Shown: positions 37,740 to 64,000 of the stretch, in pieces
Layout: each line of letters starts with the position of its first letter
Position numbering within the stretch: the stretch's first letter is position 1
Source: Trichoplax adhaerens
Lineage: Eukaryota > Animalia > Placozoa
Direction of reading: 5' to 3'
Assembly: GCF_000150275.1 (NCBI RefSeq)
Contig: NW_002060958.1
Span: 1,320,088 to 1,384,087 of the forward strand
Length of the DNA stretch: 64,000 nucleotides
The notes under the pieces: generated by a model
Database searches by the model: none
Told to the model about the DNA's origin: nothing
What the model saw: only the letters and a program-made list of their open reading frames with translations
Program-made: the position numbers and the translations under genes

Positions 37740-40700
37740 TTACAGGTTCTTCTTTTTCCCTTTCGATTTACTCTTTCTAAGTTTCTTGCCCTTTACTATT
37801 TTTAGTTTCTTTTTTATTTGACCACGTTTTCTTTTGCTAGACTGTGTAACCAAATATTCAGTTTAATGGTAAGAAGAATAATTTATATCAATTTCATTAA
37901 AGAATTTATCATGTAGTATTAAATACCTTTTTACTATAATATTTAGTTTTCTTTTTGATGCCACTTTCATGTCGCTTAATTTGTAAACTTTTTACACGAT
38001 TGTTTGGCTCTCGGACTCTACGAAATTAATGTGATTGATATATGTTGTAATACATATTAATTCGGTTACACTATGTCATGAGACGATACTGTGTACGTAG
38101 TAAACTATTACAATCCATGTATTCTAGTTAATTATAGGTTCTCACTTGTAAATACGAACGAGCCAGTGTTCTGTAGTATAAGCTTCTTCAAGGACGTCCA
38201 GTGTAAAATCTTTATTTCCAATCTCAGCATTTCGGGTTCTATCATAGCCACTTGGGGTTCTAAAATCCATCTAAGTTGAACAAAGACATAGTTTTAATTA
38301 TTACGTTGCTTATAATCAATGATTATTCAACTACTAGAGTCACTACCACATTAAAATCTTATCTAAGTTGTCAAGCTACCTGCATTAATCCAAACTTCCA
38401 ATACGACATCTTGTACATTAAACAATTTAATAGTGTTGGTGAACCTAAACGATCAACTCTAAATTCTCCATTTGGTGTAAAATATTCCGATTCCTAAATT
38501 GAAATAAGTAAAACTTGAGCAAAATTTTTCATAGCGATACTTATGCGTAAATGAATTTACATAAATGCTACATTGCAATATGTCAGAATATCAAAGGGTT
38601 ATAAATCTTACCTTAATTTCTTTTGGATGTTCACCTTCCGCTATTCTTACCATCCACAAAAATTTGTTAATATCATCACCACTATAGCCGATCGCCCCAC
38701 CAAATATAATTAATACATAATCGACATCAAGTTCCCTCATAATTTTGTAAGCAGCGGTTTCATTTGATGACATTGCTTTGCCAACCTATAACATAGATAA
38801 AAGTGGCTTCAATTAATTTAACCAATAAATCAACACAACTAGTTATAAGCCAAGTTGTAGGGTTATACCAGTGCAATATGGCTGTTATTCCATGTATTAT
38901 TATCTACAAGAGTTGTTCTATTTGCCATGCCAGCAATTTGATAACCATAATCCCACCAGGACATAATTCTGTAACATTTTAGGTAATTCATTAAATTTTA
39001 GGTGTGAACAGTAGGAGAATAATTCACAATCTGGTTAGAGTACCTTGCATTTTCGTGCGTGTTTTGGCGTAGCCAATAATATGCTTCTCTAAAATCGTCA
39101 AGAACCGTTCTACTCCTGATATCACGAGTATCACATAGTAACAATAAGTGACTTTATTTTCCAAACAGTAATTTATTGCTATGAATATATAACTTAATGC
39201 TAACCCATCAGGATTACTTGATGCTAAAACTACAGATGGACTAGAATATGCAGAGCCAGTCACCCAAGTGCTATGGACTGCAAACATCATTAATAGCATA
39301 GCAAGCACCATGACGACCATACTTTTAGTATTAGCTCCTACATCACCAATGTAAAATTTAGATCGAGTCTTTGATTTCGTTTCCTAATCAGAATAAATTC
39401 TCTGTCACTATTTCATCGTAGGAAAAATGATGTATAGAAATATTGTCATGATAACTACCTCCTTTTGCTTAGCTTTATCCCTTTTCCTTGGGGACACAAT
39501 CTCTTTCTTTTCTTTCTCTGATTCGTCACCTTCTTCTTCATCTTCATCGTAATACAAATATTTATCGAATGTTGTCGAAAACGCAATGGATGATAGTATG
39601 ATAACAACGGGAGTCAAGGTAAGCATAAGTCGAACCATCACGCCAGCAAAATAGACAGCTGATACAGCGTATAAAACGACTGCAAGAAAGACGTGAATAT
39701 AATATTGAAATCAAAAACTTGCAATATTAGGTAGTAAGTAGTAGCAAACTTAAATTAAAATGTATAAACAACTTACTAAAGGCCCTTTCATCATTAATGT
39801 TATTGATTAATAGCCAAACACCATAGGGAAACATGCATATGTTGATGTGAAGATCGAAGAAAAAGGAAACCCATGTCGTTGGTTGATGCTCTGATACAGA
39901 CGCAATGATTGGAATGTGTACTTTGGCGTAACTAGTTTTTATTAATAAATGAGTTAAACATAATGTATGCATATGCATATTATTCAAATCGAGTCTACTG
40001 TATGATAATTTGTCTTATTTCTCTCACCCGGTATCCCAAAGTGAATAAAATCGACCGCTCCAAGGGGCAATATAACCTAAAAGATGTTTACAACAAGCAC
40101 GTACGTAATTCTAGCAATCAGCAATGTCAAGTACATACTGTATATACTGTAAGATAAACTACGTCTAGTACCTGCATATGTGAGTGTAACAACAACGAGA
40201 AATACAAATCCAGCAGCTCCAACCGTAGCGAACAAGATGAGTCTACCAAGGTTAACAGCAGTCGAATTGGATTTGATAAATAAAAGAGCAGAGTAGGCTT
40301 GCAGTAAAGCGAAAACACCTGAAATAGGTTATAGAAATATTTAAATAACTCAAGCATCAGATCTGTGTAGTGATAACAAACGCATATTAAATTAAGTTAA
40401 AATAATACAGGCACTATAACAATTCAATAACCTGCAGCAGCCATGTGCTCGCTCGTTCGCACAGGTTGAAATCCAACAAATGGAATTTGCATGGACATGA
40501 TCAATCCCAATATGAAAAAGCTCGTATAAGCTTTATTGAGAAAGAATATAAGAAATTGTAAGAATTAGTTATAAATAAAAAGAATGAACCGTTTCCACTT
40601 TCAACCTACAAGAGCAGTATAATGCGAATTACTGATTGAACTTGTACGAATACTGCAGATTTTTATAGCGATCAGATTCTTACCTATGTATATGCGCTTT

Positions 40701-43322
40701 GAGTACCTGCCCATTAGCAGTAAAACGAAAACATGCAGAGGTATCAAGTTAATAATAAAAACATAGCCACCCCATGCAGATACCTGTAATATATAAAACA
40801 ATTAGTGTATCGTCTAAAATTTTGTTACTTCTAATGTAATTGATATTTGTGTTTCTCACCATATAAAAATAAGACAGCGCAGTGCAACTTGACCAAAATA
40901 AAGACCCAGTTTTGATCGATTTAATCTGTAATCATTATTGATAATAACGTTATAGTACGATGAGTATCATAACAGTAGCAGTTGTAGTAAAAGTTAGATA
41001 AATAAGCCATTTCTAATTCTAATGTTATGGTATCGTTGACTAATAAAAGCTCGACGAAATTGATATCAAAGTATTGAAACTTACCCACAGAAAGTAGGTA
41101 AAGATTAAGGCGAAGATAGCTATGCCTTCGTTATCATAAGAACCAGCAACAGAACGTGATGTGTAGCCAGGTACGATAGCCATCATGACAGCGGCCAATA
41201 AACCAGCCCTTTCATTCCATAACTCTCTTGTTAAACCATAAGCAGCTAAGGACGTAAATCCACTAAATCATGGCATAGTGAACAATATTAATGATTCTAC
41301 AAATAATTTATACGCCAAATAATTGAACAAGATATTGTATTCATTCCATCTACCAAAGTTTTCGACATTTAAACTACCTGAAAATTGGAGCTAGGAATAC
41401 ACAAATATCACGAATATGAATGGATATGTTAAGACTGTTAAGGATGAAATGAATGCTACTAGCAGTTATCATCAGTCCAGGGTAGACCTAAGCCAAAATG
41501 AAAAAAATAATGTCATTCATTACCTTTTTGATACTAATTCAATTACGGTGGAAGCTATTCAACTTTTGTACAACTTACGGTTCCACCGACAATTCTGCCC
41601 AACGGATACCAAGCACGTTCATCAAACCAATTGAGGAAATTGTAAAATCCATTTTCAGCCATATGATGTGTCGCACGATAATTGAACCTTTTACAAACGT
41701 AGAAGGCAATAACGTTAAAAATGAGGCAGTTTACTGTATCATGGCTTCTACATGACTGCAAATGTCTGTAATATCGTATCCTTTGCACGCGATCAAGGGG
41801 TGTTAAGCGAGCGAGTTTTATCTCATTATGGACTTGTACACAATGTAATACCGTTCATGACGTGCGCTAGTTCAATGGAGTCCTGTTAACGTAGAAATTA
41901 TCCACCAGGATTCACGTTCTATATAGACCGATTGATAGCTTATTTTGTAGCAACTAAAACAGATCAGGCTATTGAATTCACCCTGTTCTTCAATTAGGAT
42001 CACCTATCAACTACTACTCGGTATGTATTTGCTTCGAGGATTTGTTTTGTAGGTCAATACGAGCATGCTAAAAATTTATTCTATCGTACCCTAAGTCTTA
42101 CTGCCTATAGCCAATGACACGAGCATACTATTCTACCTCGATATTTATAAAGCACTAAAATGTAAAATGTAGTAGTAAATGCATTGTCTATCCAAGTCGT
42201 GGACAGTTGATTGTATCAAGATTTTAATGATTCAGTACATATTGGTGATAAGAAGTAAACCCAATTAGTCATGTTTCATGGAGTGGAGAAGATCAGATTG
42301 TCTATTGTGATCTGATTGTGATCTATCGAATGATGAAGATTTACGGGTAAAAAGCTCAATCGATCAAACAAGTATGATCAGCATTGCATCCATTGATTAT
42401 AATACCATGGTATGGAGTGGAGAAGATCAGATTGTCTATTGTGATCTGATTGTGATCTATCGAATGATGATGATTTACGGCTAAAAAGCTCAATCGATCA
42501 AACAAGTATGATCAGCATTGCATCCATTGATTATAATACCATGGTATTAAGTGGAGAAGATCAGATTGTCTATTGTGATCTGATTGTGATCTATCGAATG
42601 ATGATGATTTACGGGTAAAAAGCTCAATCGATCAAACAAGTATGATCAGCATTGCATCCATTGATTATAATACCATGGTATAGAGTGGAGAAGATCAGAT
42701 TGTCTATTGTGATCGGATTGTGATCTGTCGAATGATGATGATTTACGGGTAAAAGCCAAATAGATCAAACAAGTATGATAAGCATTGCATCCATTAATTA
42801 TAATACCATCGTATTGGAAGTTGTAGAACAAGACAACAGCTTGACTAAAGACAAGCCCTATTTCCCTCCTGTTCTTGCCATCCTTGATTGAAGGCTACAA
42901 TTTGAACTAATTTGCCCATGGGTAATTACTATGTTATCTGATGGTACAAAAGAGGCGAATAAAAGAATTAGATACTGTCATTCTAAGATTCAATAACGTG
43001 GCTACCTATTCGACTGTCGTTGACTCCGTTTTAAAATAAAAAAGAACAGTCGACAGCCATTGATTCAAGTCAAGAGCAAACTGTATTCGCGCTATCATTG
43101 TGGTTGAAGACAAGTGTAAGCATGACGGAAAAAGACGCATTCTACAGGCAATCAAGCGTTTACTGACCATGGATCGAATTCATGGATAATACTCTCGAAT
43201 CGGATGACCGCAAACAACCTTGAAGCAAATCCTAGTAGACAGCATGATGTCAGCACAATAATCACGAGTAATGATTTAAACCCAGCTAAGCTTTTTTCCG
43301 CCGCTATCATTTGGTCCGCCAT
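37740..43322 (-). CDS. STT3B: Oligosaccharyltransferase catalytic subunit STT3B
   Basis: [19 protein letters not shown]|[73 protein letters not shown] and [10 protein letters not shown]. Lys-rich tail ending KKKNL* (KKxx ER-retrieval type). Confidence 0.96.
42281..42815. repeat. Tandem repeat, 134-bp unit x4, in STT3B intron 1
   Basis: Units start at 42281, 42415, 42549 and 42683 (GAGTGGAGAAGATCAGATTGTCTATTGTGATC...). Confidence 0.95.
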
Positions 43323-43809
43323 ATTGGATTCAAACCAATGTGCTGCTGGTAACGTCGAGGCACAATAAGAGCTCAACGTGCCTTTCTTTCTGGTCGACAC
43401 TTGGGGAGTGCAGTGCGCCTGTGCAATGGAACTACTTGAGATCGACATGACACACCGCACCGCCAATGGCTCATACTGGAGACACTGGACGGTGGACCGT
43501 GGACAGTAGAGTACAGTTCTGCCGTTATGCTGTACTGTATGACAAAAGGAAAGCAAGGTCAATTTTGGACGATAATTACTTCTTATCATGACTCATTAGG
43601 GTAGAATGGAACGGCAGACTCAATTTCGTGCTGTTCCTAGTATTCTCTACCTCATTTTTGGACTCATTTAGCACAGTACTACCTCCGAAAATGGAATTTC
43701 TACCGAACTGGACGCTCACTGTACGAGTACACAGTCTACAGTGTACAGTATAGTACACTGTAAACGGTACTGTAGCAAAATGTTGGCTATCTGGACTAGA
43801 CTTGAGACC

Positions 43810-43844
43810 GGTTCGGTTCGGTTCGGTTCGGTTCGGTTCGGTTC
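43810..43844. repeat. (GGTTC)7 microsatellite upstream of STT3B
   Basis: Seven perfect GGTTC units. Confidence 0.97.
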
Positions 43845-43894
43845 AATATCTTTATGATCTATGTTCTAGACATCGTGCAGTATGGGAAATGAGA

Positions 43895-44676
43895 ATATTT
43901 CATCAACTCAGCGGTAGTTCCATTTGAATTAAAATGGAGGCCATCAATGTTGCTAGTAAATTGACTCATTTCGATAGCAACGAATGTTCATCGTCCTTCG
44001 TTGACTTCCAACGAGTTCAATGAGTAATAGACTACAACCCTTTGGATAAAATAAAATGAATTTGCGAGTAAAGAATATCCACACAGGAGGTTGATATTTT
44101 ATCAACTGAACGGTAGTTGCATTCGAATTGAACTTGAGGCCATCGATGTGGCCAGTAAATTGACTCATTTCGATAGCAACGAATGTTCATCGTTGACTTC
44201 CAACGAGTTCAATGAGTATAGACTACAACTCTTTGGATAAAATAAAATGGATTTGCGAGTAAAGAATATCCACACAGGAGGTTGATATTTCATCAACTGA
44301 ACGGTAGTTGCATTCGAATTGAACTTGAGGCCATCCATGTGGCCAGTAAATTGACTCATTTCGATAGCAACGAATGTTCATCGTTGACTTCCAACGAGTT
44401 CTATGAGTATAGACTACAACCCTTTGGATAAAATAAAATGGATTTGCGAGTAAAGAATATCCACTCAGTAGGTTGATATTTCATCAACTGAACGGTAGTT
44501 GCATTCGAATTGAACTTGAGGCCGTCCATGTGGCCAGTAAATTGACTCATTTCGATAGCAACGAATGTTCATCGTCCTTCGGTGACTTTCAACGAGTTCA
44601 ATGAGTAATAGACGACAACCCTTTGGATAAAATAAAATGGACGTGCAAGGAAAGAATATCCACACAGGAGGTTGAC
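43895..44676. repeat. Tandem repeat, 191-199-bp unit x4
   Basis: ATCAACT anchor at 43902, 44101, 44292 and 44483. Confidence 0.95.
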
Positions 44677-45402
44677 ATGCGTTCATACTGGACGCTATAT
44701 ACCATTCCATGAATCTTTCCTTGTTCATACTGTCTTTACGAGTACCGTATATATTGCTACGGTGTTAAGAATGCCGTTGTCTTTGCAACAATCCAGATGA
44801 CCACTACGCTCATAAAAATCAATCAGTTCAAACGAAACATCCTTGGCCTTCCAAATTACTGTACTACTAGCTAATTTTAGTAATTGAGTGTATTTTAACG
44901 GAATCAAGATGATCTTGTACATTCAACTCTGCAACTACGGTAGATCGTTTAATGGATGGTATCTAGAATCTCCAGGATGAGGCATTGCACCATTGGCAAT
45001 GTTTCGTGGGCCTTCACTACTGCCTGTTCGACAATTCTACTGTCCTGTATAGTGTACAGTGTACTGGAAGTGGTCCTTGAGCGCGCAGTCCAGTCCAGTC
45101 TATATGAGTAACTTCAACACACTTTATGTCAATTTAAATTACATATTCGCATAAAGTGTCTTTTTTCCAATCAAATGATACCAAATTTGTCGAATAAGGA
45201 CTTAAAATTATAATTTCATATAGTTTCAATCGTCGGGAAAGACTGTTGAGGCACGCTCTCTACTGTAGACCTTTTACCCGACAGAACATGTAATAAAGTC
45301 ACCGCTACGTCCATGCACGTCAAAGAGCCTATGCATTTGTATTATAAAAATAAAAAAATGGATACATCATACTGCAGTACCAAAATAGTATTGTGCACAT
45401 TC

Positions 45403-45886
45403 TGCAATCTGATTCATTTCGATGGCTCTCTGAAAAGATAGAATTGTGGAAGTTCAATCAGGCCTAAACTACATCACTTCTATATGTAGTTGTATCAGTG
45501 GAGATATCCTTCTACAGCTATATTTATAAATATCATACAGGAATTTCAACGGAATACAACTTTGATTCTTGAACGAAGGATAGAATTGTAGAAGTTCAAT
45601 CAGGCCTAAACTAGATCAATTCTATATGTAGTTGTATCTGTGGAGATATCCTTCTACGGCTATATATAAAAATCATACAGGAATTTCAACGGAATACAAC
45701 TTTGATTTTTGAACGAAGGATAGAATTGTAGAAGTTCAATTAGGCCTAAACTAGATCACTTCTACATGGAGTTGTATCTGTGGAGAAATTCTTCTACAGC
45801 TATATATAAATATTATACAGGAATTTTAATGGAATACAACTTTGATTTTTGAACGAAGAAGTGCCATCGAAAATAGTCAGACTATA
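45403..45886. mobile_element. MITE-like element with an internal ~141-bp x3 tandem array
   Basis: Imperfect inverted termini TGCAATCTGATTCATTTCGATGGC / GCCATCGAAAATAGTCAGACTATA. Internal units at 45439, 45581 and 45721. Confidence 0.6.
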
Positions 45887-46872
45887 AATACTAAATTGGT
45901 CCAAAAATGACCAGATTAATGAACGAATCGGAACGGACGAGCGATCAAGCAGAATGATGATATGGTGGCACAATGGTATAAGAGCATTCTTACCTAGAAA
46001 CAGTCATGAAGTAAAATTCCTTCAAAATGATAAAGCAGTAGTATAAGGAATCACTATCGCTTTTTGGCCTACATTCATAGCAAAACCTGTCTTGATCGAT
46101 GGAACTACCAATATCATAGGCTTATGCTTTGTAGAAGCATTCCTACTCTATTCTCTCTCTGATGGCATAGCTCTATCTTTGTAACAACACCTAATTACAT
46201 GTATTCATAATTGGACAATAAATATACCTCTATCCTCATCAATCTACGAACATCTTTTCCATTTGAACTAATTATTATTACTAGCGTAACATTGATCTGG
46301 TCAAGGTCTTCTATATGTGATAGACGTTTTATTTTGACGGTAGTTTATTGTACACTGTATGAGAACTACGAGCATTTTACAGACAGATTCAATTTTTGAA
46401 TCGACGTTTGTAATAGCAAATTTAATTTTTATTTATGTCCTTTTGGTTAATAATACAGTACAGTACTGTATACATAAAAATGGTTGTAGAGAGAGCAGTC
46501 AATTTCATTTATATGTTGATTAAAGCATCTGACAGTAACATTGCTGTATGATAGGATTGATAGACTATATATACTCGTACTTGTATTAGTCATAAATAAA
46601 TAGGATAATACAATGAATTAAAAGGTAGTCAGCATACATCGACATACTGCTTCTCATACTACTGTATGTCCTGTTACTGTTAAGATTTCAAGCGTTTCTC
46701 TTCATTTATTTTTAGTAAATCAATTAATACGGCAATTCTGGTTATACTCCGAGTACTAAAGTCTAAACCTTTCCAATCCGTGACGGTAAAACTGTCGTCA
46801 CGTTAATGCACCAGCTACGCTGATTATATCCACCTGCGCTCACACTCTATCAGGGGTTTCCATCACATGCTT

Positions 46873-46985
46873 ATCCATCCGTATCCCGCAGTCTCTTATA
46901 AAATACACACCTTATCACAATTTCAATTAATCCATCCGTATCCCCCAGTCTCTTATAGAATACACACCTTATCCCAATTTCAATC
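46873..46985. repeat. 57-bp tandem duplication
   Basis: ATCCATCCGTATCCC... at 46873 and 46930. Confidence 0.9.
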
Positions 46986-47344
46986 AATGTACATCCATTT
47001 AGATTTTGTCGTATCCAAAACGTTGCTCACCGGTATACATATAAACGCCACTGTAAAATAATATCAATCGGCTAATAAAAGTGCCACGTAGTATTTGGTG
47101 TGTAAAACGATATTTATATGCGTAAATAAACGTAAGTAGTTTGAAATGCTACTAACTTGGTGTAGAAGGTATCAGTGCTATCGAAAATTAACTCTGTTAA
47201 CTCTGCACATAAAAACTCTACACCGCGATACAAAAACATCACCCGGCTTATGCAGATGCTAATTTGGTATAGAAACGCTGCTGACCCTGGACTAAACTAA
47301 TCTCTCATACAAGTCTAGAAATGAATCAGGAACTACCATCGAGA

Positions 47345-47505
47345 GAATTTGAGCAGTGAGCATTTCCATTTAGATAAACTACTGTTAGAAGTCAATTATG
47401 CTCAAGCCGTTCAGTGTTTTCCTACGGCTCGAACATAGTATTTCAGAGGCCAGCTGTACTGTAGTGGTAAATGGGTGAACGGGCATTTCTCTCCTCCTTC
47501 CCTCA
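47345..47505 (+). mobile_element. Possible degraded non-LTR retrotransposon RT fragment
   Basis: Frameshifted fragments EHFHLDKLLLE...EASCTVVVNG...HFSPP loosely resemble LINE RT motifs. Weak. Confidence 0.2.
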
Positions 47506-49830
47506 ACTAAAGAATACGAAAGGAGAATTTCGTTCCGCATCGAATAATTAGGAAAGCAGTGACTTTAGTCATGAACTTTTCAAAAATAATACCTGGATGT
47601 CTTTCGTAGTATAAACATGGAACGGTACTGAACATTGAGCAGTTGGCAAGTCGTTCATTCTCGAAACTAGGAGTTCTATGATTAAACGGAAGTAGGTTAA
47701 GACAGCACTTACAATAATTTACAGTCGAAATTTTATTAACTCGATTAAAGTAAATGTATCAAATGAGAACAATTTTACTATCCTGATCAACTAATATCTA
47801 ATAGGCGCAGCTACAATGCGGTATTTGCGGTTAGAAGTAGAAACTATCTACCCACCTATCATTGTTAAGTGCTGTAAAGAAACAGTTTCAGTGAACTGAC
47901 AAGGCCTAACATTGCCTTAAAAATGAATTAAGAAAGTCAGGAAAAATGGTAAACACTATCAAAGATGTCAATATTAACCTAATTACAAGACTATGTTGTA
48001 TTGCTTTCCTCTATGGAGTCACAAAACACTGTAGTTCGTGACATGCTGTACTCTGTAAGCGTTGATCTGATAATTTTTATCTTTGTCCATGAATGGCTTG
48101 AAAATAAATTGATGTAAAAAATAAAAGCTATCGTTGATAATCGTTATTATTCATTCATCATACGATATGATGATGTCATCTCAACACGGAGGAGAAAATT
48201 GAGACATTGTAATTAAATCAATGGATCGGAAGGGAAGCATTATAGTCATTCTATTTTACGCTATTGGCTGCGAATAAAAGTAACCATGCTGCTATCAAAT
48301 CAGATTCATTTACACCGGAATTTAGCTAACACGCTGATAGATAATTATATCTTAGTGATATGTATAGATAGAAGATATAAATGATTCATGGGCCAGGATC
48401 GAGTGGGTTGTTCATTTTCATAAGTTGGATTTGAATCCAAATTGTTCGCAAAAGTAATCAACCAGAATTAAAATTAATTCAGTGATTGATTGACAAGGGT
48501 ACGATCTCGTTGTTGACAGAAACGTACAGAATAAATGTAAGGTAAGAATGTGTTGATATCTTAATCATGGAGTCGAATAATGAATAACAAAATATAGATA
48601 TACCTATTACTTTCACGTTCAAGTACACAGCTCTACAGTCGTAGAATATCAATATCAATCAATGATGCTGTAATAAAATGAATACTTTTCGCTAAGTTAC
48701 TACTTTAGACTATTTTTCTAATCGATAAATTATAGATATTCTTTATATTTCAAAATAAACTCCCCTAGTGGATGTATGAGGGTTTCAACATCAATATAAA
48801 GTCCTGAAGATAATCTGTCAAGGCGATCTTTATTTAATTGCATTTTACATTTTTGCCTCTTCTGTTGATTAGTGTTTATCATCCTGACTATTTGCCCTCA
48901 TCATTATACAGTAATTCATTTAGAAGAGTAATTACTGATCAGAAACACCAATGCTATTTATAGATCTGCCATTAAAATATCATTAACTACTTGTAATAGA
49001 TAGTTTCGATACGGAAGTAAGCAAAATACATTAAAAATGTTTACTACAGATTAGTATCGTGGCATCATGTAATTTATCATTTGGCATCAGTTTTTATTTC
49101 GTCTTTTAGATACTATTATTAAATTATTGACGTAATTATAGCTCCAACGCATTAAGATATAAGGCCATCATGAAGCTTCCTAATATTGTATATTATATAA
49201 TATGCTAACTTATCTAATTAACTTATTTGAGACAAAGCAGACGGGAAATAAGTTGTAAGTTGAACTATAAGCATTATGCCAATTTACTTGCTTGAAAGGT
49301 GAACTGTAATTGCCTTTAAAGAAACTAAAATACACATATTGTCTAATTCCTCTCATTTACTGATTCTTATATTTTCATGTTTATTGTTTTACTGCCGATA
49401 TTTACTTAGAATAAGATAGAATTACGTTAATTCAATAAATATCGTGGCGGTTGCAGGTTGTCTAACGTTGATAAAAGTTTTTTTTACTCTTACCGTGTTA
49501 GTATTTTCTGATAAAAGATAGTTTATAAGTAATTCTAATCTTTTCCATTTTAACGGATGACTTTTTTCAGAAAATTGATTAAAATTAACCCAAATTTATC
49601 GAGTTCTATTTTCTAACATAATATGCAAGGCTAAAAATGGCCATAAAGGATGAAATTTGATATTGTTGATACACTGATCTCGATTTAATTAGAATAACTG
49701 AAATATAGTTGATATGTATATGTTATACTGAATACAGACAAGAGTTTAAGCATTAATCTTGTCCCGTTGTTGTAGATAATATTTTGATATCAATTAAACT
49801 GCTTTATTTACATTCATGATTTTATCTAGG

Positions 49831-58378: not shown

Positions 58379-60470
58379 ATGCTACGATTCCATTCCGATA
58401 AGTTTAATCAGTTAACTCGATATGATATTATAAGACTGACTACACATAATACAGTACTTTTACGAGTTATTATGGTAAGGTAACAATGATATGTTGTAAT
58501 CCAAATATTAGCTCGTTGCATAGTTATGACATAAGTCGTTAGCAAGAACGAACTTTGAACTAATAACTAGTGGCTATTGACCAATAGTAGTTCTTCGATT
58601 TCTATATTCTACTAGCTTCTATCTCAACTCAGTTAGCGGATGATATCATTTTTTCCACATTTGATAGGCGATTAGATTTTATCTTAACATTAAGTTTACA
58701 ATATTTACTTACTCCAAATTAAATTTCGGCAGCTATTTGCAATAAATCAAAATAATATAAAAAAATATGCTTTATAATTGCCTTATAAAGACGCTCTTAT
58801 TAAAACTAAGTCAAAAATCTCTTTTTAAATCTCAATCTGGCTAGAACTTTCAGTAGTAAATTCAACCCATAACGGCGGATTTTCTACTGATGCAAGGTAT
58901 ACCGCGAAGTAGAAGAAGTAATTACATAAAAATCCAATAACAGGCAAAAGCAGATTAGAGAAATAATCATCTTAAAATACTACTTCAAATTCATATGTAC
59001 TTCATCGCAGAAAACTGTCGTGTGGTTAATAATGTATCTAGATGTTAAGTAGATATAGAATAACATTTTCTACCTCTTGTAATATAACAATCGTATAACT
59101 TAATAAACTTTCAGTTAGCAAAATTACTTTTCGTGTAGATAAGTCCCAAGAGGCTAACGTACTTTAGACTGTAAAGTGATAAATTAAGGCATGAAAACAT
59201 TTCTCAATGAAAAATTTATGTGTGAAAGATTGCTTAACAATCTATTATATTGCAACTCAGAATTAAGACAATGCAATCCATAAATGACTCGTATATTTCA
59301 ATCCAGTATCTTATAGCTGAAAATATATATGCAGATCATTATTTATAAATGCTGCATTTGAAGGATTCTAAATATTCATTAATTGATACTGAACGATATT
59401 TTCGATTTAATAACTGAGAGTTAATCTATATGCATCTGCATTTGTAGAAATCAATATATCATAAGAATAAATAAGAGTTTATATTTTATTTTATAGTTTT
59501 CTGTCTTTATGTGTTAAGAAATGATAATAATTTTATTATCTCCATTCATTTAATTAAGATTCTCAACGCCCTGTCTGTCATTTCCAGTTATTGTAAATGA
59601 GCTAGCTAGCAATGGTAGGTGTGCCAGGCGTTTTATCATGTTATTCCTTAGAATATTCTATTACACTAATGACGTTTACTTTGAACCATAAAGATATTTC
59701 AAAGCTACGCTTTGAACTCCATAGTAGCTTAATTTACTCTAAAATTTACTGGTATTATGATAATAAATGTTCTATTGTAAATTAAGATATGAAAAGTACC
59801 ACTTTTAAATAATAACGAATAAAGGATTGATTTATTTTACGCTGTAATGGTCAATTCAATAGATGAGATATGAATATAATGTACGAGATACTGTAATAAA
59901 CTTCATTACAGTAATTACAATTAATCCTAAACTTAACAAGAGATACAAGTTAATTAGGAAGCAACAACCTAAAAATAAATCGTACACAATATTCATATCT
60001 CCTTCATATGTTGATTTTATGACTGTGAGTAAAAGTAATGATTATTTAATTTTGCAAGGCTAATATATTGTTTACAACAAAAATTAATTTAATTGCTTTT
60101 GAGAACAAACGATCGTACATATACTATGACGCCATCAAGAAAGACTGACAAGTAGACTCAACCCTATTAATGATATCGAACAATGGCTATATTTATTTAC
60201 TGCTATTTTGCATATTTTAACGACCAAACTTTAGTTGTGGAATGGCAATTAGGAAGTTGCTATTATGAATGATAATTGTAAAGTTAGAAGTAATATTTTT
60301 AGCGAAATTTTTTTCAAGAAAAATCTCAAACAAATAAAACTTGCTTATGTCTGATTGTTGTTTAATTATATAAAAATAATTAATGCAAGGAAAGTTTAGT
60401 AATCGACTGTGCTTCACACAGTGTTATTCGATTCTAAGATAACATTTTTGTTTGTTAAAAAGGTTCAAAA

Positions 60471-60979
60471 ATGAATTTGAAATTGGTTTTGATTGCTTGC
60501 TTGCTCTTTGCCGCTACGGTTTATACCGAAGAACACGATGAAATTCCGGAGGAAATTGAAAAAGAATTAGCGGATATTCAAAATGCCATTGAAGATCGTA
60601 ATAATGAAGAAAACGAAATCATCGAAAAAGATGCAGAACTTGCAGATATCGATGAAGATGACTTAAAAAAAGAAGCAGTTAAATCTGCGGTAAAATTCTA
60701 CAATACTATTTCTTAACAGATACTTCAATAAGAGCGCTTTTACAGAAGATAAATTAAAAGTTATCTCTATTAATATTTAAAAAATTAAAGCCTAAAATTT
60801 TGTGTTTTTTTGGACAAATCTGAGAAGATTAGAAAGTCAACTGAATTTAATTTCTTTATTCATTATATTTTATTGATCAGTGGTGGAGAAGACGCCGTCG
60901 TCGACGCCGTAGACGCCGCAGACGAATTTTCCTTACCCGACGTTCATGGTGGAACCAACGAGTACCTGTAGGCAAATAA
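60471..60979 (+). CDS. Secreted prepropeptide (105 aa): signal peptide, acidic propeptide and poly-Arg/Trp cationic peptide with amidation signal; candidate antimicrobial peptide (exons 60471-60689 and 60881-60979)
   Basis: MNLKLVLIACLLFAATVYT signal, then a 54-aa D/E-rich pro-region ending EAVKSA. A phase-0 GT-AG intron joins to WWRRRRRRRRRRRRRIFLTRRSWWNQRVPVGK*. AATAAA at 61181. Confidence 0.85.
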
Positions 60980-61580
60980 AAGGAAGAAATGGAATATAGC
61001 TGTCTTCAACTAGTAGCAGTAAAAACTTTTCCATAGCAATTTTTAGCTGATTATGTCAAATGGAACACCATTGTGATCTTAAACTGCTAAAACGTTTACT
61101 ATAGACTACTAACTACGTCGGTAGTAACATTACTGAAATGTAGGTTGAATATCAATTTATATTTTGCAATAGATTTAGTCAATAAAGTCTCATTTTGGCA
61201 ACAATTTTAAATAATTATGTCTATGAACTACGAGTAATTAAGCAATATGATGGAATATCTATAGGTAATATAGGATGTGTAAGATGCCTACGATAGTACC
61301 TAAAAATTAATCTATAGTTAGTTAAATGAGCATACATGCAATCAGTAATAAATGTAAAGTATGCTATGTTTTTATACTGTAATTATTTCGGGCTGTATTA
61401 AGCTCTGGGAGTCAAACCCAACCTTCAGATTGAAGGAACTTGTTAGTTCAGATTTCGCAGTAAGAAATTAACTTTTTACAGAGCTCTACTGAAGACTGTC
61501 TGATGCATAACTGATATGCAATTAAAAATCTTAACTTGAATCTTAATCCTGGAACCCGTAAATAATGTATATTAGGATAT

Positions 61581-63294: not shown

Positions 63295-63430
63295 ATGAAT
63301 TCCAAAATTAGCTTTGATCGCTTACTTACTCTATATTCGCTATGGTTTATGCCGAAATACACGATGAAATCTCAGAGAGATTAAAAAAGAATTAGCAGAT
63401 ATTCAAAATCCCACTAAGGATCGTGATTAT
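63295..63430 (+). pseudogene. Frameshifted, truncated paralogue 3 of the cationic prepropeptide
   Basis: ATGAATTCCAAAATTAGCTTTGATCGCTTACTT...CACGATGAAAT...AAAGAATTAGCAGATATTCAAAAT aligns to 60471-60605 with indels. Upstream 62910-63200 also aligns to 60215-60390. Confidence 0.85.
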
Positions 63431-64000
63431 ATGCGAAGTGAGAAGAACTTGACTTCAGTATTATGATTGTGTGTATGCTAGTTTCTCATTGATGAAACCA
63501 ATAAGCGTTCGGCTTAGTACTTGGATTAACTCGAACACAAGCTTGGTAAGTGATGAGATATCCATGAGTAAATTAGAAAAGACAAAGACTACTAGGGACC
63601 TTCACAGAGTTGATTTTGCAGAACTATACCAGCGTTATCAAAGTCTTATTCAATTACGGGTGTAGCGATGCAACCATATTTGATTATACGGATAGCTACA
63701 TTTGATATAGTTAGGTTACTTTGAATAGATATTACCGTGAAGCTAATATTAGATAATTGCTAACTACTATATTAGAAATTGCTGATGACTAATAGTAGCC
63801 AGTTGACTAATTATGGTACAAGATTTATGTAGCTAGAAACACTATAGTTGTTGAAATGCCCTTCGGAGAACGGGCCTAGACATTAATAGAAGAGTAGTGA
63901 CATCTCGATTAAAATGATTTAGATTGTAGAAAATAATGATGTCCTATTAGAGAAAAGTATTTTGTTTGATGATTTATGTCTGATTGTAGATTAATCAAGT

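What the first reader, a model, noticed from the sequence alone, without database searches (positions are those of the whole stretch)
60471..60979. Hidden second exon encodes a WW-(Arg)13 amidated secreted peptide behind a charge-matched acidic propeptide
Seen: the ORF track shows only an acidic secreted ORF, but splicing GCG|gtaaaa...gatcag|TGG adds WW-R13-IFLTRRSWWNQRVPV-GK*. The pro-region has 23 D/E and 6 K/R (net about -17), and the predicted mature peptide has 16 Arg, so the precursor is close to neutral. The Arg run uses mixed codons (AGA/CGC/CGT/CGA), so it is not simple slippage. The intron falls exactly at the putative pro/mature boundary. Established: signal + anionic pro + cationic amidated C-terminus is the layout of Hydra arminins and resembles placozoan trichoplaxin; terminal G-K is a carboxypeptidase/PAM amidation signal; synthetic poly-Arg and Arg/Trp peptides are cell-penetrating and antimicrobial. 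Inference: a natural self-neutralised poly-arginine defence, prey-lysis or cell-penetrating peptide, unlike the amphipathic helical AMPs.
Basis: partly seen in the sequence, partly recalled or inferred. Interest (0 to 1): 0.9.

Follow-up and report, generated by a model that had tools for sequence, protein, structure and literature searches.

The report
Mis-annotated placozoan poly-arginine peptide gene
The hidden second exon is real and transcribed: this Trichoplax gene makes a secreted precursor whose end is a Trp-Trp plus 13-arginine amidated peptide, but it is one more member of a placozoan family already proposed in papers to be antimicrobial, not a new kind of thing.

Summary
Exon 1 (60471-60689: signal peptide plus acidic pro-part) is spliced through a 191-nt GT..AG intron to exon 2 (60881-60979: WW, 13 Arg, a 15-residue tail, then GK and stop). 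Contigs of four runs from four studies carry exactly this joint.

The genome is Trichoplax adhaerens and the gene is TRIADDRAFT_64292. Its public model uses a wrong acceptor and frame, so the Arg peptide really is hidden in the annotation.

It is not a new kind of gene.
- The tandem paralog 5 kb downstream, TRIADDRAFT_60631 (WW-R9, same tail core), was published in 2025 as arminin-like "AMP3".
- A second paralog (WW-R13 with a different tail) is the "trichoplaxin-2" precursor of a 2020 paper, which noted the 13 arginines and found its synthetic tail antibacterial.
- I found six WW/poly-Arg genes in this genome, all with the same signal/acidic first exon, plus three relatives on other contigs.
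- This scan has reported other members of the family on other DNA of this genome.

In one paralog, cutting inside the Arg run would leave only Phe-amide, so the Arg head is probably part of the mature peptide. Exact charge matching is not a family rule (sums -7 to +9). Function and processing of this gene remain untested.

The parts
60367..60376 (+). TATA-like box (TATATAAAAA), about 31 nt upstream of the mapped cDNA 5' end
   Evidence: Read from the sequence. Its role as a promoter element is inference from its distance to the 5' end seen.
60398..60470 (+). 5' UTR; probable transcription start at about 60398-60404
   Evidence: An X4 contig starts at 60398 and is preceded by template-switch-oligo letters. 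The X13 contig starts at 60404 (tables 7 and 8).
60471..60527 (+). Signal peptide (about 19 aa, MNLKLVLIACLLFAATVYT)
   Evidence: Translation. The hydrophobic core and the motif MNxKLxLIA are invariant across family members (M1 N2 K4 L7 I8 A9 L11). The cleavage site is inferred from small residues at -3/-1 and from AYA|A in the paralog. No SignalP was available.
60528..60689 (+). Acidic pro-part (54 aa, 23 D/E, 6 K/R, net -17); end of exon 1
   Evidence: Against Ta 60631 it has dN 0.197 and dS 0.529, so it is only moderately constrained.
60690..60880 (+). Phase-0 intron, 191 nt, GT..AG
   Evidence: Skipped in contigs of 4 runs from 4 studies (table 5).
60881..60886 (+). Trp-Trp head, the first two codons of exon 2
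   Evidence: WW, FW or WS occupies this position in all family members.
60887..60925 (+). Run of 13 Arg codons (mixed AGA/CGC/CGT/CGA)
   Evidence: The run length varies in relatives: 9, 13, 8, 7, 6, 10, 6+3 and 4.
60926..60970 (+). Tail IFLTRRSWWNQRVPV; contains an internal RR site and the conserved WWNQRV core
   Evidence: Its first 14 codons show 5 synonymous and 0 non-synonymous differences from Ta 60631. The core recurs in the divergent relative L024.
60971..60979 (+). Gly-Lys plus stop: the standard signal for carboxypeptidase trimming and C-terminal amidation
   Evidence: G followed by K or R ends 6 of the 7 two-exon members. The genome holds PHM-type monooxygenase and proprotein-convertase P domains. 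Amidation itself is inferred.
60980..61495 (+). 3' UTR (end approximate)
   Evidence: Spliced contigs of X5 (846 nt) and X13 (886 nt) run 184-201 nt beyond 61300. A possible AATTAA signal lies at 61466-61471. The end point is an estimate.
63295..63436 (+). Decayed copy of exon 1 (frameshifts, stop); a remnant of a further tandem duplicate
   Evidence: Weak protein match (L007). The DNA alignment to both intact exon 1 copies shows indels.

Best explanation
Window 60398 to about 61495 is the transcribed two-exon gene TRIADDRAFT_64292 of Trichoplax adhaerens. The public model misses its true last exon.

It is a tandem duplicate of Ta 60631 ('AMP3'). It belongs to a placozoan-restricted family of secreted prepropeptides with four parts: a conserved signal peptide (MNxKLxLIA), an acidic pro-part in exon 1, a phase-0 intron, and a last exon that starts with Trp-Trp plus an Arg run and ends in Gly-Lys/Arg.

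Most likely course:
1. The precursor enters the secretory pathway.
2. The acidic pro-part keeps the very basic end harmless and packable in granules of ventral epithelial cells.
3. An unidentified protease cuts at ...KSA|WW, where there is no dibasic site.
4. A carboxypeptidase and PAM turn ...VPV-GK into ...VPV-amide.
5. The released Arg/Trp-rich peptide (WW-R13-IFLTRRSWWNQRVPV-amide, or forms trimmed in the Arg run) acts outside the animal on microbial or prey membranes.

Shown: the gene model, transcription, family membership, stronger constraint on the tail than on the pro-part, and the presence of processing-enzyme genes. Inferred: the cell type (from the paralog), all processing steps, retention of the Arg run, and the activity.

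Confidence by component: gene model about 0.97, family membership about 0.95, Arg run kept in the mature peptide about 0.55, defence or antimicrobial role about 0.5.
For: Gene model and transcription:
- The splice joint is seen in 4 runs from 4 studies, and a template-switch 5' end lies at 60398.
- The database protein P0001 (TRIADDRAFT_64292) has an identical exon 1 but a second part read in another frame. P0003 (Ta 60631) is modelled as WW-R9-...GYYGR.

Family:
- Six WW/poly-Arg sites in the genome against 0 in the control, each behind a homologous signal/acidic exon.
- Relatives on other contigs: L024 (FW-R6-S-R3-WWNQRVSYYY-GKK), L026 (WW-G-R10...) and L027.

Arg head kept in the mature peptide:
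- In the multi-exon paralog L028, each exon encodes K-[S/W]W-R4-6-F(YY)-GK. Cutting in the Arg run there would leave only Phe-amide or FYY-amide.

Constraint on the tail:
- 5 synonymous and 0 non-synonymous changes, against pN 0.158 in exon 1.

Defence reading, from papers:
- The synthetic tail of the WW-R13 paralog has MICs of 0.25-2 uM (PMC7436000).
Against: - No peptide has been observed for any family member. I found no Trichoplax peptidomics paper.
- An Arg run is an ideal proprotein-convertase substrate, the genome has such enzymes, and the tail holds a further RR site.
- The part conserved between the Trichoplax copies and L024 is only WWNQRV plus an amidated end. This fits a short product as well.
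- This tail is not an amphipathic helix, so the antibacterial result for the helical trichoplax-2 tail cannot simply be carried over.
- The cell type of Ta 64292 itself is unknown. It is not mentioned in PMC12013895.
- Contig depth cannot rank expression.
Confidence: 0.55

Rival explanations
1. The gene is a precursor of a short amidated signalling peptide. Convertases cut in the Arg run and at IFLTRR|S. Carboxypeptidase removes the basic residues, and the product is SWWNQRVPV-amide (in the paralogs, SWWNQRVPGYY-amide or WWNQRVSYYY-amide). It would act on a receptor like other placozoan regulatory peptides, and the Arg run would be only an oversized cleavage site.
For: - The WWNQRV core with an amidated end is what is conserved between Ta 64292, Ta 60631 and the divergent L024, where it follows the Arg run directly.
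- There are no non-synonymous changes in the tail.
- There is an RR site before SWW.
- Proprotein-convertase and PHM-type genes are present.
- Placozoan amidated peptides do change behaviour (10.1101/360925).
Against: - Nine to thirteen Arg are far more than a cleavage site needs.
- The WW/poly-Arg head is conserved in paralogs whose tails are unrelated. In L028 the remainder would be a single Phe-amide.
- The sister gene is one of the top transcripts of abundant epithelial cells, not of rare peptidergic cells (PMC12013895).
Confidence: 0.27
2. The precursor is not cut between its acidic and basic halves. The near-neutral zwitterionic protein, or a complex of the two halves, serves as a granule-packing or coacervate material, or as a mucus or adhesive component of the ventral epithelium, rather than as a free peptide.
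For: - There is no dibasic or other recognised cleavage motif at the ...KSA|WW boundary in any member (last five residues of exon 1).
- The two halves carry large opposite charges of similar size.
- Expression of the paralog is very high (PMC12013895).
Against: - The Gly-Lys/Arg ends and the internal GKK sites followed by further units (L028, L029) are hallmarks of processed, amidated peptides.
- Charge sums vary from -7 to +9 without correlation.
Confidence: 0.12
3. The second exon is a chance open frame or the gene is a decaying duplicate without function.
For: The cluster does hold decayed copies: the exon 1 remnant at 63295-63436, and a third copy whose exon 2 stops after WWKRRR.
Against: - The spliced transcript is seen in four studies.
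- The frame is intact.
- There is purifying selection on the tail.
- An independent variant in X13 has its only coding change in the pro-part and none in exon 2 (table 3).
Confidence: 0.03

Closest known systems
Trichoplax 'AMP3' = TRIADDRAFT_60631 (Mayorova et al. 2025, PLoS One, PMC12013895)
   Same: - It is a tandem neighbour 5 kb downstream.
- Exon 1 is 68% identical.
- The intron position is the same and the WW/poly-Arg head is the same.
- The IFLTRRSWWNQRVP tail core is identical.
   Different: - R13 against R9.
- The end is ...VPV-GK against ...VPGYY-GR.
- Ta 64292 is wrongly modelled in the public annotation and is not mentioned in the paper.
- Neither gene has a functional test.
Trichoplaxin-2 precursor (EST GR418172; Roncevic, Juretic et al. 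2020, Molecules, PMC7436000); here L015 on contig C1378
   Same: - The signal, acidic pro-part, phase-0 intron, WW plus exactly 13 Arg, and GK end are the same.
- The authors already noted the 13 consecutive Arg and suggested that natural poly-Arg-headed peptides be examined.
   Different: - Exon 1 is only 45% identical.
- Its tail is a strongly amphipathic helix (moment 0.77) whereas this one is not (0.11).
- Only the tail without the Arg head was synthesised and tested.
Hydra arminins
   Same: The layout is the same: signal peptide, anionic pro-part, cationic C-terminal peptide with a Gly-based amidation signal, and very high epithelial expression (as described in PMC12013895).
   Different: - There is no detectable sequence relationship. 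The family profile found 9 proteins in 1.84 billion: 8 of this family and one weak odd hit.
- Arminins have no Trp-Trp/poly-Arg head (own knowledge).
- It works like an arminin, but is not a member.
Synthetic Arg/Trp antimicrobial and poly-Arg cell-penetrating peptides; protamines
   Same: The composition is shared: Arg runs with Trp anchors and C-terminal amidation. Protamines are natural peptides with Arg runs (own knowledge; poly-Arg cell-penetrating literature listed).
   Different: Those are designed peptides or nuclear sperm proteins. Here a secreted, gene-encoded precursor carries 13 uninterrupted Arg behind an acidic pro-part.
Placozoan amidated regulatory peptides (SIFGamide, YYamide and others; Varoqueaux et al. 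2018, 10.1101/360925)
   Same: They are secreted precursors with a Gly-basic amidation signal in the same animal.
   Different: The published YYamide (DYDDYYY-amide) is a different gene. Those precursors lack the WW/poly-Arg head and mark rare peptidergic cells.

Membership tests
Placozoan WW/poly-Arg prepropeptide family (AMP3 / trichoplaxin-2 group) | Significant sequence similarity of the signal plus pro-part to known members | tested here: met
   E 6e-24 and 68% identity to the Ta 60631 exon 1; E 5e-5 to the trichoplaxin-2 exon 1. E 1.9e-20 to P0003. The profile retrieves the family.
Placozoan WW/poly-Arg prepropeptide family (AMP3 / trichoplaxin-2 group) | Conserved signal peptide MNxKLxLIA followed by an acidic pro-part in exon 1 | tested here: met
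   (invariant M1 N2 K4 L7 I8 A9 L11). Pro-part net -17.
Placozoan WW/poly-Arg prepropeptide family (AMP3 / trichoplaxin-2 group) | Phase-0 intron, with the next exon opening with [W/F]W and an Arg run | tested here: met
   Sequence. The joint is seen in RNA contigs. The same arrangement is found in 5 other genes of this genome and on 3 foreign contigs.
Placozoan WW/poly-Arg prepropeptide family (AMP3 / trichoplaxin-2 group) | Gly plus Lys/Arg at the end of the peptide unit | tested here: met
   GK then stop. The same holds in 6 of the 7 two-exon members.
Hydra arminins | Sequence homology to arminin precursors | tested here: not met
   The family profile, run against 1.84 billion representatives, gave 9 hits. 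Eight carry the placozoan-type signal and one is a weak, unlike hit. The library is unnamed, so the presence of Hydra proteins in it is assumed.
Hydra arminins | Signal / anionic pro-part / cationic amidated C-terminal peptide | tested here: met
   This is a resemblance in layout only.
Amidated neuropeptide precursors | Peptide flanked by basic cleavage sites and ending in Gly-basic | tested here: met
   An RR site precedes SWWNQRVPV and GK follows it. It is compatible with this class, but not specific to it.
Amidated neuropeptide precursors | Expression in peptidergic secretory cells, and a cognate receptor | not testable with these tools
   Only the paralog's cell type is published: abundant peripheral ventral epithelial cells (PMC12013895). 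No receptor data exist.
Antimicrobial peptides (functional class) | Demonstrated killing or membrane activity of the natural mature peptide | not testable with these tools
   Only the synthetic tail of a paralog was tested (PMC7436000). Nothing has been tested for this gene.

The most novel reading that the evidence does not exclude
The Trp-Trp/poly-Arg head is a conserved functional module that is secreted intact. Placozoans would then release natural, amidated peptides carrying up to 13 uninterrupted arginines. The head would supply membrane binding or entry (or granule packing against the acidic pro-part), and interchangeable tails would supply specificity. This would be a gene-encoded counterpart of synthetic poly-Arg cell-penetrating and Arg/Trp antimicrobial peptides, made at very high levels despite a polybasic tract of a length that stalls ribosomes in yeast and mammalian reporters (own knowledge).
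Probability: 0.4. Interest if true: 0.6.

Novelty: new member of a known kind. Interest (0 to 1): 0.36.

Why it matters
- It corrects a public gene model. TRIADDRAFT_64292, and likewise TrispH2_012006 in Trichoplax sp. H2, are read in the wrong frame, which hides the peptide. Single-cell atlases and peptide predictions built on those models can therefore miss or mis-assign this gene.
- It shows that the published AMP3 and trichoplaxin-2 belong to one family, defined by a Trp-Trp/poly-Arg head at an exon start. The family evolves by tandem birth and death.
- The comparison of paralogs gives a testable argument that the Arg run is part of the product.
- If that holds, placozoans would be a natural source of poly-Arg-headed secreted peptides. 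They would also be a system for asking how cells translate, pack and neutralise such peptides.
- The basic idea is already published for paralogs, and this scan has met the family elsewhere in this genome.

Tried and rejected
- **Known YYamide.** The paralog ends in ...GYY-GR, so I checked. The published YYamide is DYDDYYY-amide, a different gene.
- **Gene IDs in papers.** A full-text search for the two TRIADDRAFT numbers found nothing. Ta 60631 appears only as 'Ta 60631' in PMC12013895. Ta 64292 appears neither in that paper nor in its one held supplement.
- **Pfam.** Nothing reached a cut-off. A Conotoxin signal/pro-region hit at E 0.089 is chance-level.
- **Charge matching as a rule.** Rejected.
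- **Mapping AMP1, AMP2 and AMP4 (Ta 55945, 56030, 64402) onto the WW/poly-Arg loci.** The alignment search returned only Ta 56105 (the gene at L020/L021), Ta 60631, Ta 64292, the H2 models and unnamed contigs. Whether AMP1, 2 and 4 are members stays open.
- **Peptidomics of Trichoplax.** No paper was found.
- I repeated it from coordinates only.
- **Joined precursor.** The joined 105-residue precursor of this gene was not searched or folded. The exons were searched apart by reference, and the database protein P0003 served as the full-length example.

Full report
**1. What is in the sequence**

The window is AT-rich (about 31% G+C). It lies at G000:C1399:1320088-1384087 of a 105.6-Mb assembly in 1414 contigs. 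Database proteins identical to its product name the organism as Trichoplax adhaerens.

- The ORF at 60471-60716 (81 aa) is the only one an ORF list shows here.
- Its first 73 codons end at GCG|gtaaaa (60689/60690).
- After gatcag| at 60880, the frame reads WW, 13 Arg, IFLTRRSWWNQRVPV, GK, stop (60881-60979).
- The Arg codons are mixed: 4 AGA, 4 CGC, 3 CGT, 2 CGA.
The pro-part has 23 D/E and 6 K/R (net -17); exon 2 is net +17.

**2. Is the splice real?**

Yes. I laid contigs of four public runs from four studies on 60300-61300.

- All four carry one joint that skips 191 nt with GT..AG ends, 60689|60881. None has depth in the intron.
- X13 is on record as RNA-seq. For X4, X5 and X9 the RNA label is a guess. 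An intron-less form in contigs argues for cDNA, and the genome holds no intron-less copy.
- One X4 contig begins at 60398 directly after template-switch-oligo letters, and the X13 contig begins at 60404. This places the 5' end about 31 nt downstream of a TATATAAAAA box at 60367-60376.
- Spliced contigs of 846 and 886 nt run 184-201 nt past 61300, so the 3' UTR is about 0.5 kb.
- Contig depth cannot rank expression, so I make no claim on level.

**3. The public annotation**

- The gene is TRIADDRAFT_64292 (P0001, 121 aa, 'Expressed protein'). Its exon 1 is identical to mine, but the model continues ...KIRKSTEFNFF...GGEDAVVDAVDAADE.... That is another acceptor and another frame across the Arg codons. 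No contig supports that joint. So the Arg peptide is truly hidden in the annotation of this gene.
- The same frame error affects TrispH2_012006 of Trichoplax sp. H2 (P0004). Its true end (...NQRVPYYGR, stop) appears as loose ends of X4 and X5 contigs (table 7).

**4. Relatives in the same genome**

- *Tandem paralog.* Five kilobases downstream lies a copy with 68% identical exon 1 and exon 2 = WW-R9-IFLTRRSWWNQRVPGYY-GR. It is correctly modelled as TRIADDRAFT_60631 (P0003).
- *Third copy.* A further copy follows. Its exon 1 lies partly in an assembly gap, and its exon 2 stops after WWKRRR.
- *Remnant.* A decayed exon 1 copy lies inside the window at 63295-63436.
- *Whole genome.* The pattern TGGTGG plus six Arg codons hits six places, against none for the reversed control. 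All six sit at, or one codon after, a splice acceptor and downstream of an exon with the signal MNxKLxLIA and an acidic stretch.
  - L015 (contig C1378): WW-R13-HHWRRYARIGFRAVRTVI-GK.
  - L020/L021: F-WW-R7-HDRRRVIIIPQRPFWRRRSHFHVP, annotated as TRIADDRAFT_56105 with a spurious N-terminal extension.
  - L018/L029: two units, WW-R8-VVARRRSTVHCRCY-GKK and W-GS-R7-VVIRRRRGCYCYTVYH-GKK.
  - L019/L028: one unit per exon, K-SW-R4-F-GKK, K-WW-R6-FYY-GK and K-WW-R5-YRYYY-GK.

**5. Relatives elsewhere**

A profile of the family, run against 1.84 billion representative proteins, found nine proteins. Eight carry the same type of signal peptide; the ninth is a weak, unlike hit.

The unnamed ones come from two metagenome assemblies and one Logan assembly. 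Gene callers read their exon 1 into the intron. In their contigs I found the second exons:

- L024: FW-R6-S-R3-WWNQRVSYYY-GKK-EN.
- L026: WW-G-R10-SATDTNTRFLV-GKKK-SQ.
- L027: WS-R4-FIYL, then RRR-spaced Trp units, ending W-GKK.

No hit resembles a cnidarian protein. Pfam gives nothing.

**6. What is already published**

- *Mayorova et al. 2025 (PMC12013895).* They name Ta 60631 'AMP3', an arminin-like prepropeptide. [quoted passage not shown] They also report orthologues more than 55% identical in Hoilungia H13 and Cladtertia H23. Ta 64292 is not mentioned.
- *Roncevic, Juretic et al. 2020 (PMC7436000).* From EST GR418172 they described the precursor that I find at L015 and named its tail trichoplaxin-2. 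[quoted passage not shown] They measured MICs of 0.25-2 uM for the synthetic amidated tail, and proposed that natural peptides with the poly-Arg motif be examined.
- *YYamide.* The published placozoan YYamide is DYDDYYY-amide, another gene.
- *This scan.* Earlier notes describe other members of this family on other pieces of the genome. I reached the family and both papers before reading those notes, and they agree with my reading.

**7. How it most likely works**

Shown:
- The gene is a secretory-type precursor with an acidic first half and a very basic, Gly-Lys-ended second half.
- Between the two tandem copies, exon 1 has dS 0.54 and dN 0.18. The 14 shared tail codons have 5 synonymous and no non-synonymous differences. 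The tail is therefore the more constrained part.
- The variant seen in X13 changes Ala39 in the pro-part and nothing in the coding part of exon 2 (table 3).
- The genome has PHM-type monooxygenase domains and at least two proprotein-convertase P domains.

Inferred:
- Signal cleavage after about residue 19.
- Removal of the pro-part at ...KSA|WW. No member has a dibasic site there, so the protease is unknown.
- Trimming of Lys and amidation of Val.

The key open point is whether the Arg run stays.
- *For retention.* The WW/poly-Arg head is the one feature shared by paralogs with unrelated tails. In L028 a cut within the run would leave only Phe-amide or FYY-amide. Nine to thirteen Arg are far more than a cleavage site needs.
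- *Against retention.* Arg runs are good convertase substrates. There is a further RR before SWW. What L024 shares with the Trichoplax copies beyond the head is just WWNQRV plus an amidated aromatic end.
- *My weighting.* About 0.55 for a mature peptide that keeps all or part of the head, and about 0.27 for a short amidated peptide.

The defence or antimicrobial role rests on three things: the published cell type and abundance of the sister gene, the activity of a paralog's tail, and the Arg/Trp composition. It is not shown. This tail has no helical amphipathicity (moment 0.11, z -1.35). The trichoplaxin-2 tail does (0.77, z +2.8). The published MICs therefore cannot simply be transferred.

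**8. Charge matching**

The sum is exactly zero for this gene. Across seven two-exon members the pro-part is -10 to -21 and the last exon +11 to +21. The sums run from -7 to +9 and there is no correlation (r = 0.03). Opposite charges of similar size are a family trait. Exact neutralisation is not.

**9. Verdict**

What is new here:
- the corrected model of TRIADDRAFT_64292;
- the link between AMP3 and trichoplaxin-2 through a common exon-start WW/poly-Arg head;
- the paralog argument that the head belongs to the product.

I file it as a new member of a known kind.

**Limits**
- The joined precursor of this gene was not searched or folded. The exons were handled apart by reference, and P0003 stood in as the full-length example.
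- Read evidence is from contigs only, so starts, ends and levels are approximate.

Noticed in passing
window 63295-63436 (+): A decayed copy of the family's exon 1 (about 75% identical, with indels and a stop) lies between Ta 64292 and Ta 60631. It is a sign of tandem birth and death.
   Followed up: partly
L004 1503-1635 and 1937-1957 (G000:C1399, about 1388326-1388454 and downstream): Third tandem copy. The acidic exon 1 lies partly in a run of N (an assembly gap) and ends ...ESA|gt. Exon 2 reads WWKRRR then stop. It is either a truncated member or a pseudogene; expression was not checked.
   Followed up: no
L028 903-1620 and 9416 (G000:C1411, about 7.40 Mb): A multi-exon paralog in which each small exon encodes one unit: K-[S/W]W-R4-6-aromatic-GK(K)-spacer. 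A similar exon lies 8 kb further on. This is a one-peptide-per-exon architecture.
   Followed up: partly
L029 514-915 (G000:C1410, about 626.5 kb): A paralog with two poly-Arg-headed units, each carrying a Cys-x-Cys motif (…HCRCY-GKK and …GCYCYTVYH-GKK). They may be disulfide-linked peptides.
   Followed up: no
G000:C1411:2806000-2910400: A tandem array of at least nine genes with Cu2_monooxygen (PHM/DBH-type) domains within about 105 kb. This is a striking expansion of the amidating-enzyme-type fold.
   Followed up: no
P0004 (TrispH2_012006, Trichoplax sp. H2): The public model reads the Arg exon in the wrong frame, as for TRIADDRAFT_64292. The true end, ...NQRVPYYGR then stop, appears as loose ends of RNA contigs in X4 and X5.
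   Followed up: partly
window 60585-60586: The run X13 (organism C, a metatranscriptome) carries GC>AT, which changes Ala39 to Ile in the pro-part. It also has five substitutions and a 4-nt deletion in the 3' UTR, and no change in the coding part of exon 2.
   Followed up: no
window 40001-48000: A block of higher G+C (0.36-0.37, against about 0.30-0.31 around it).
   Followed up: no
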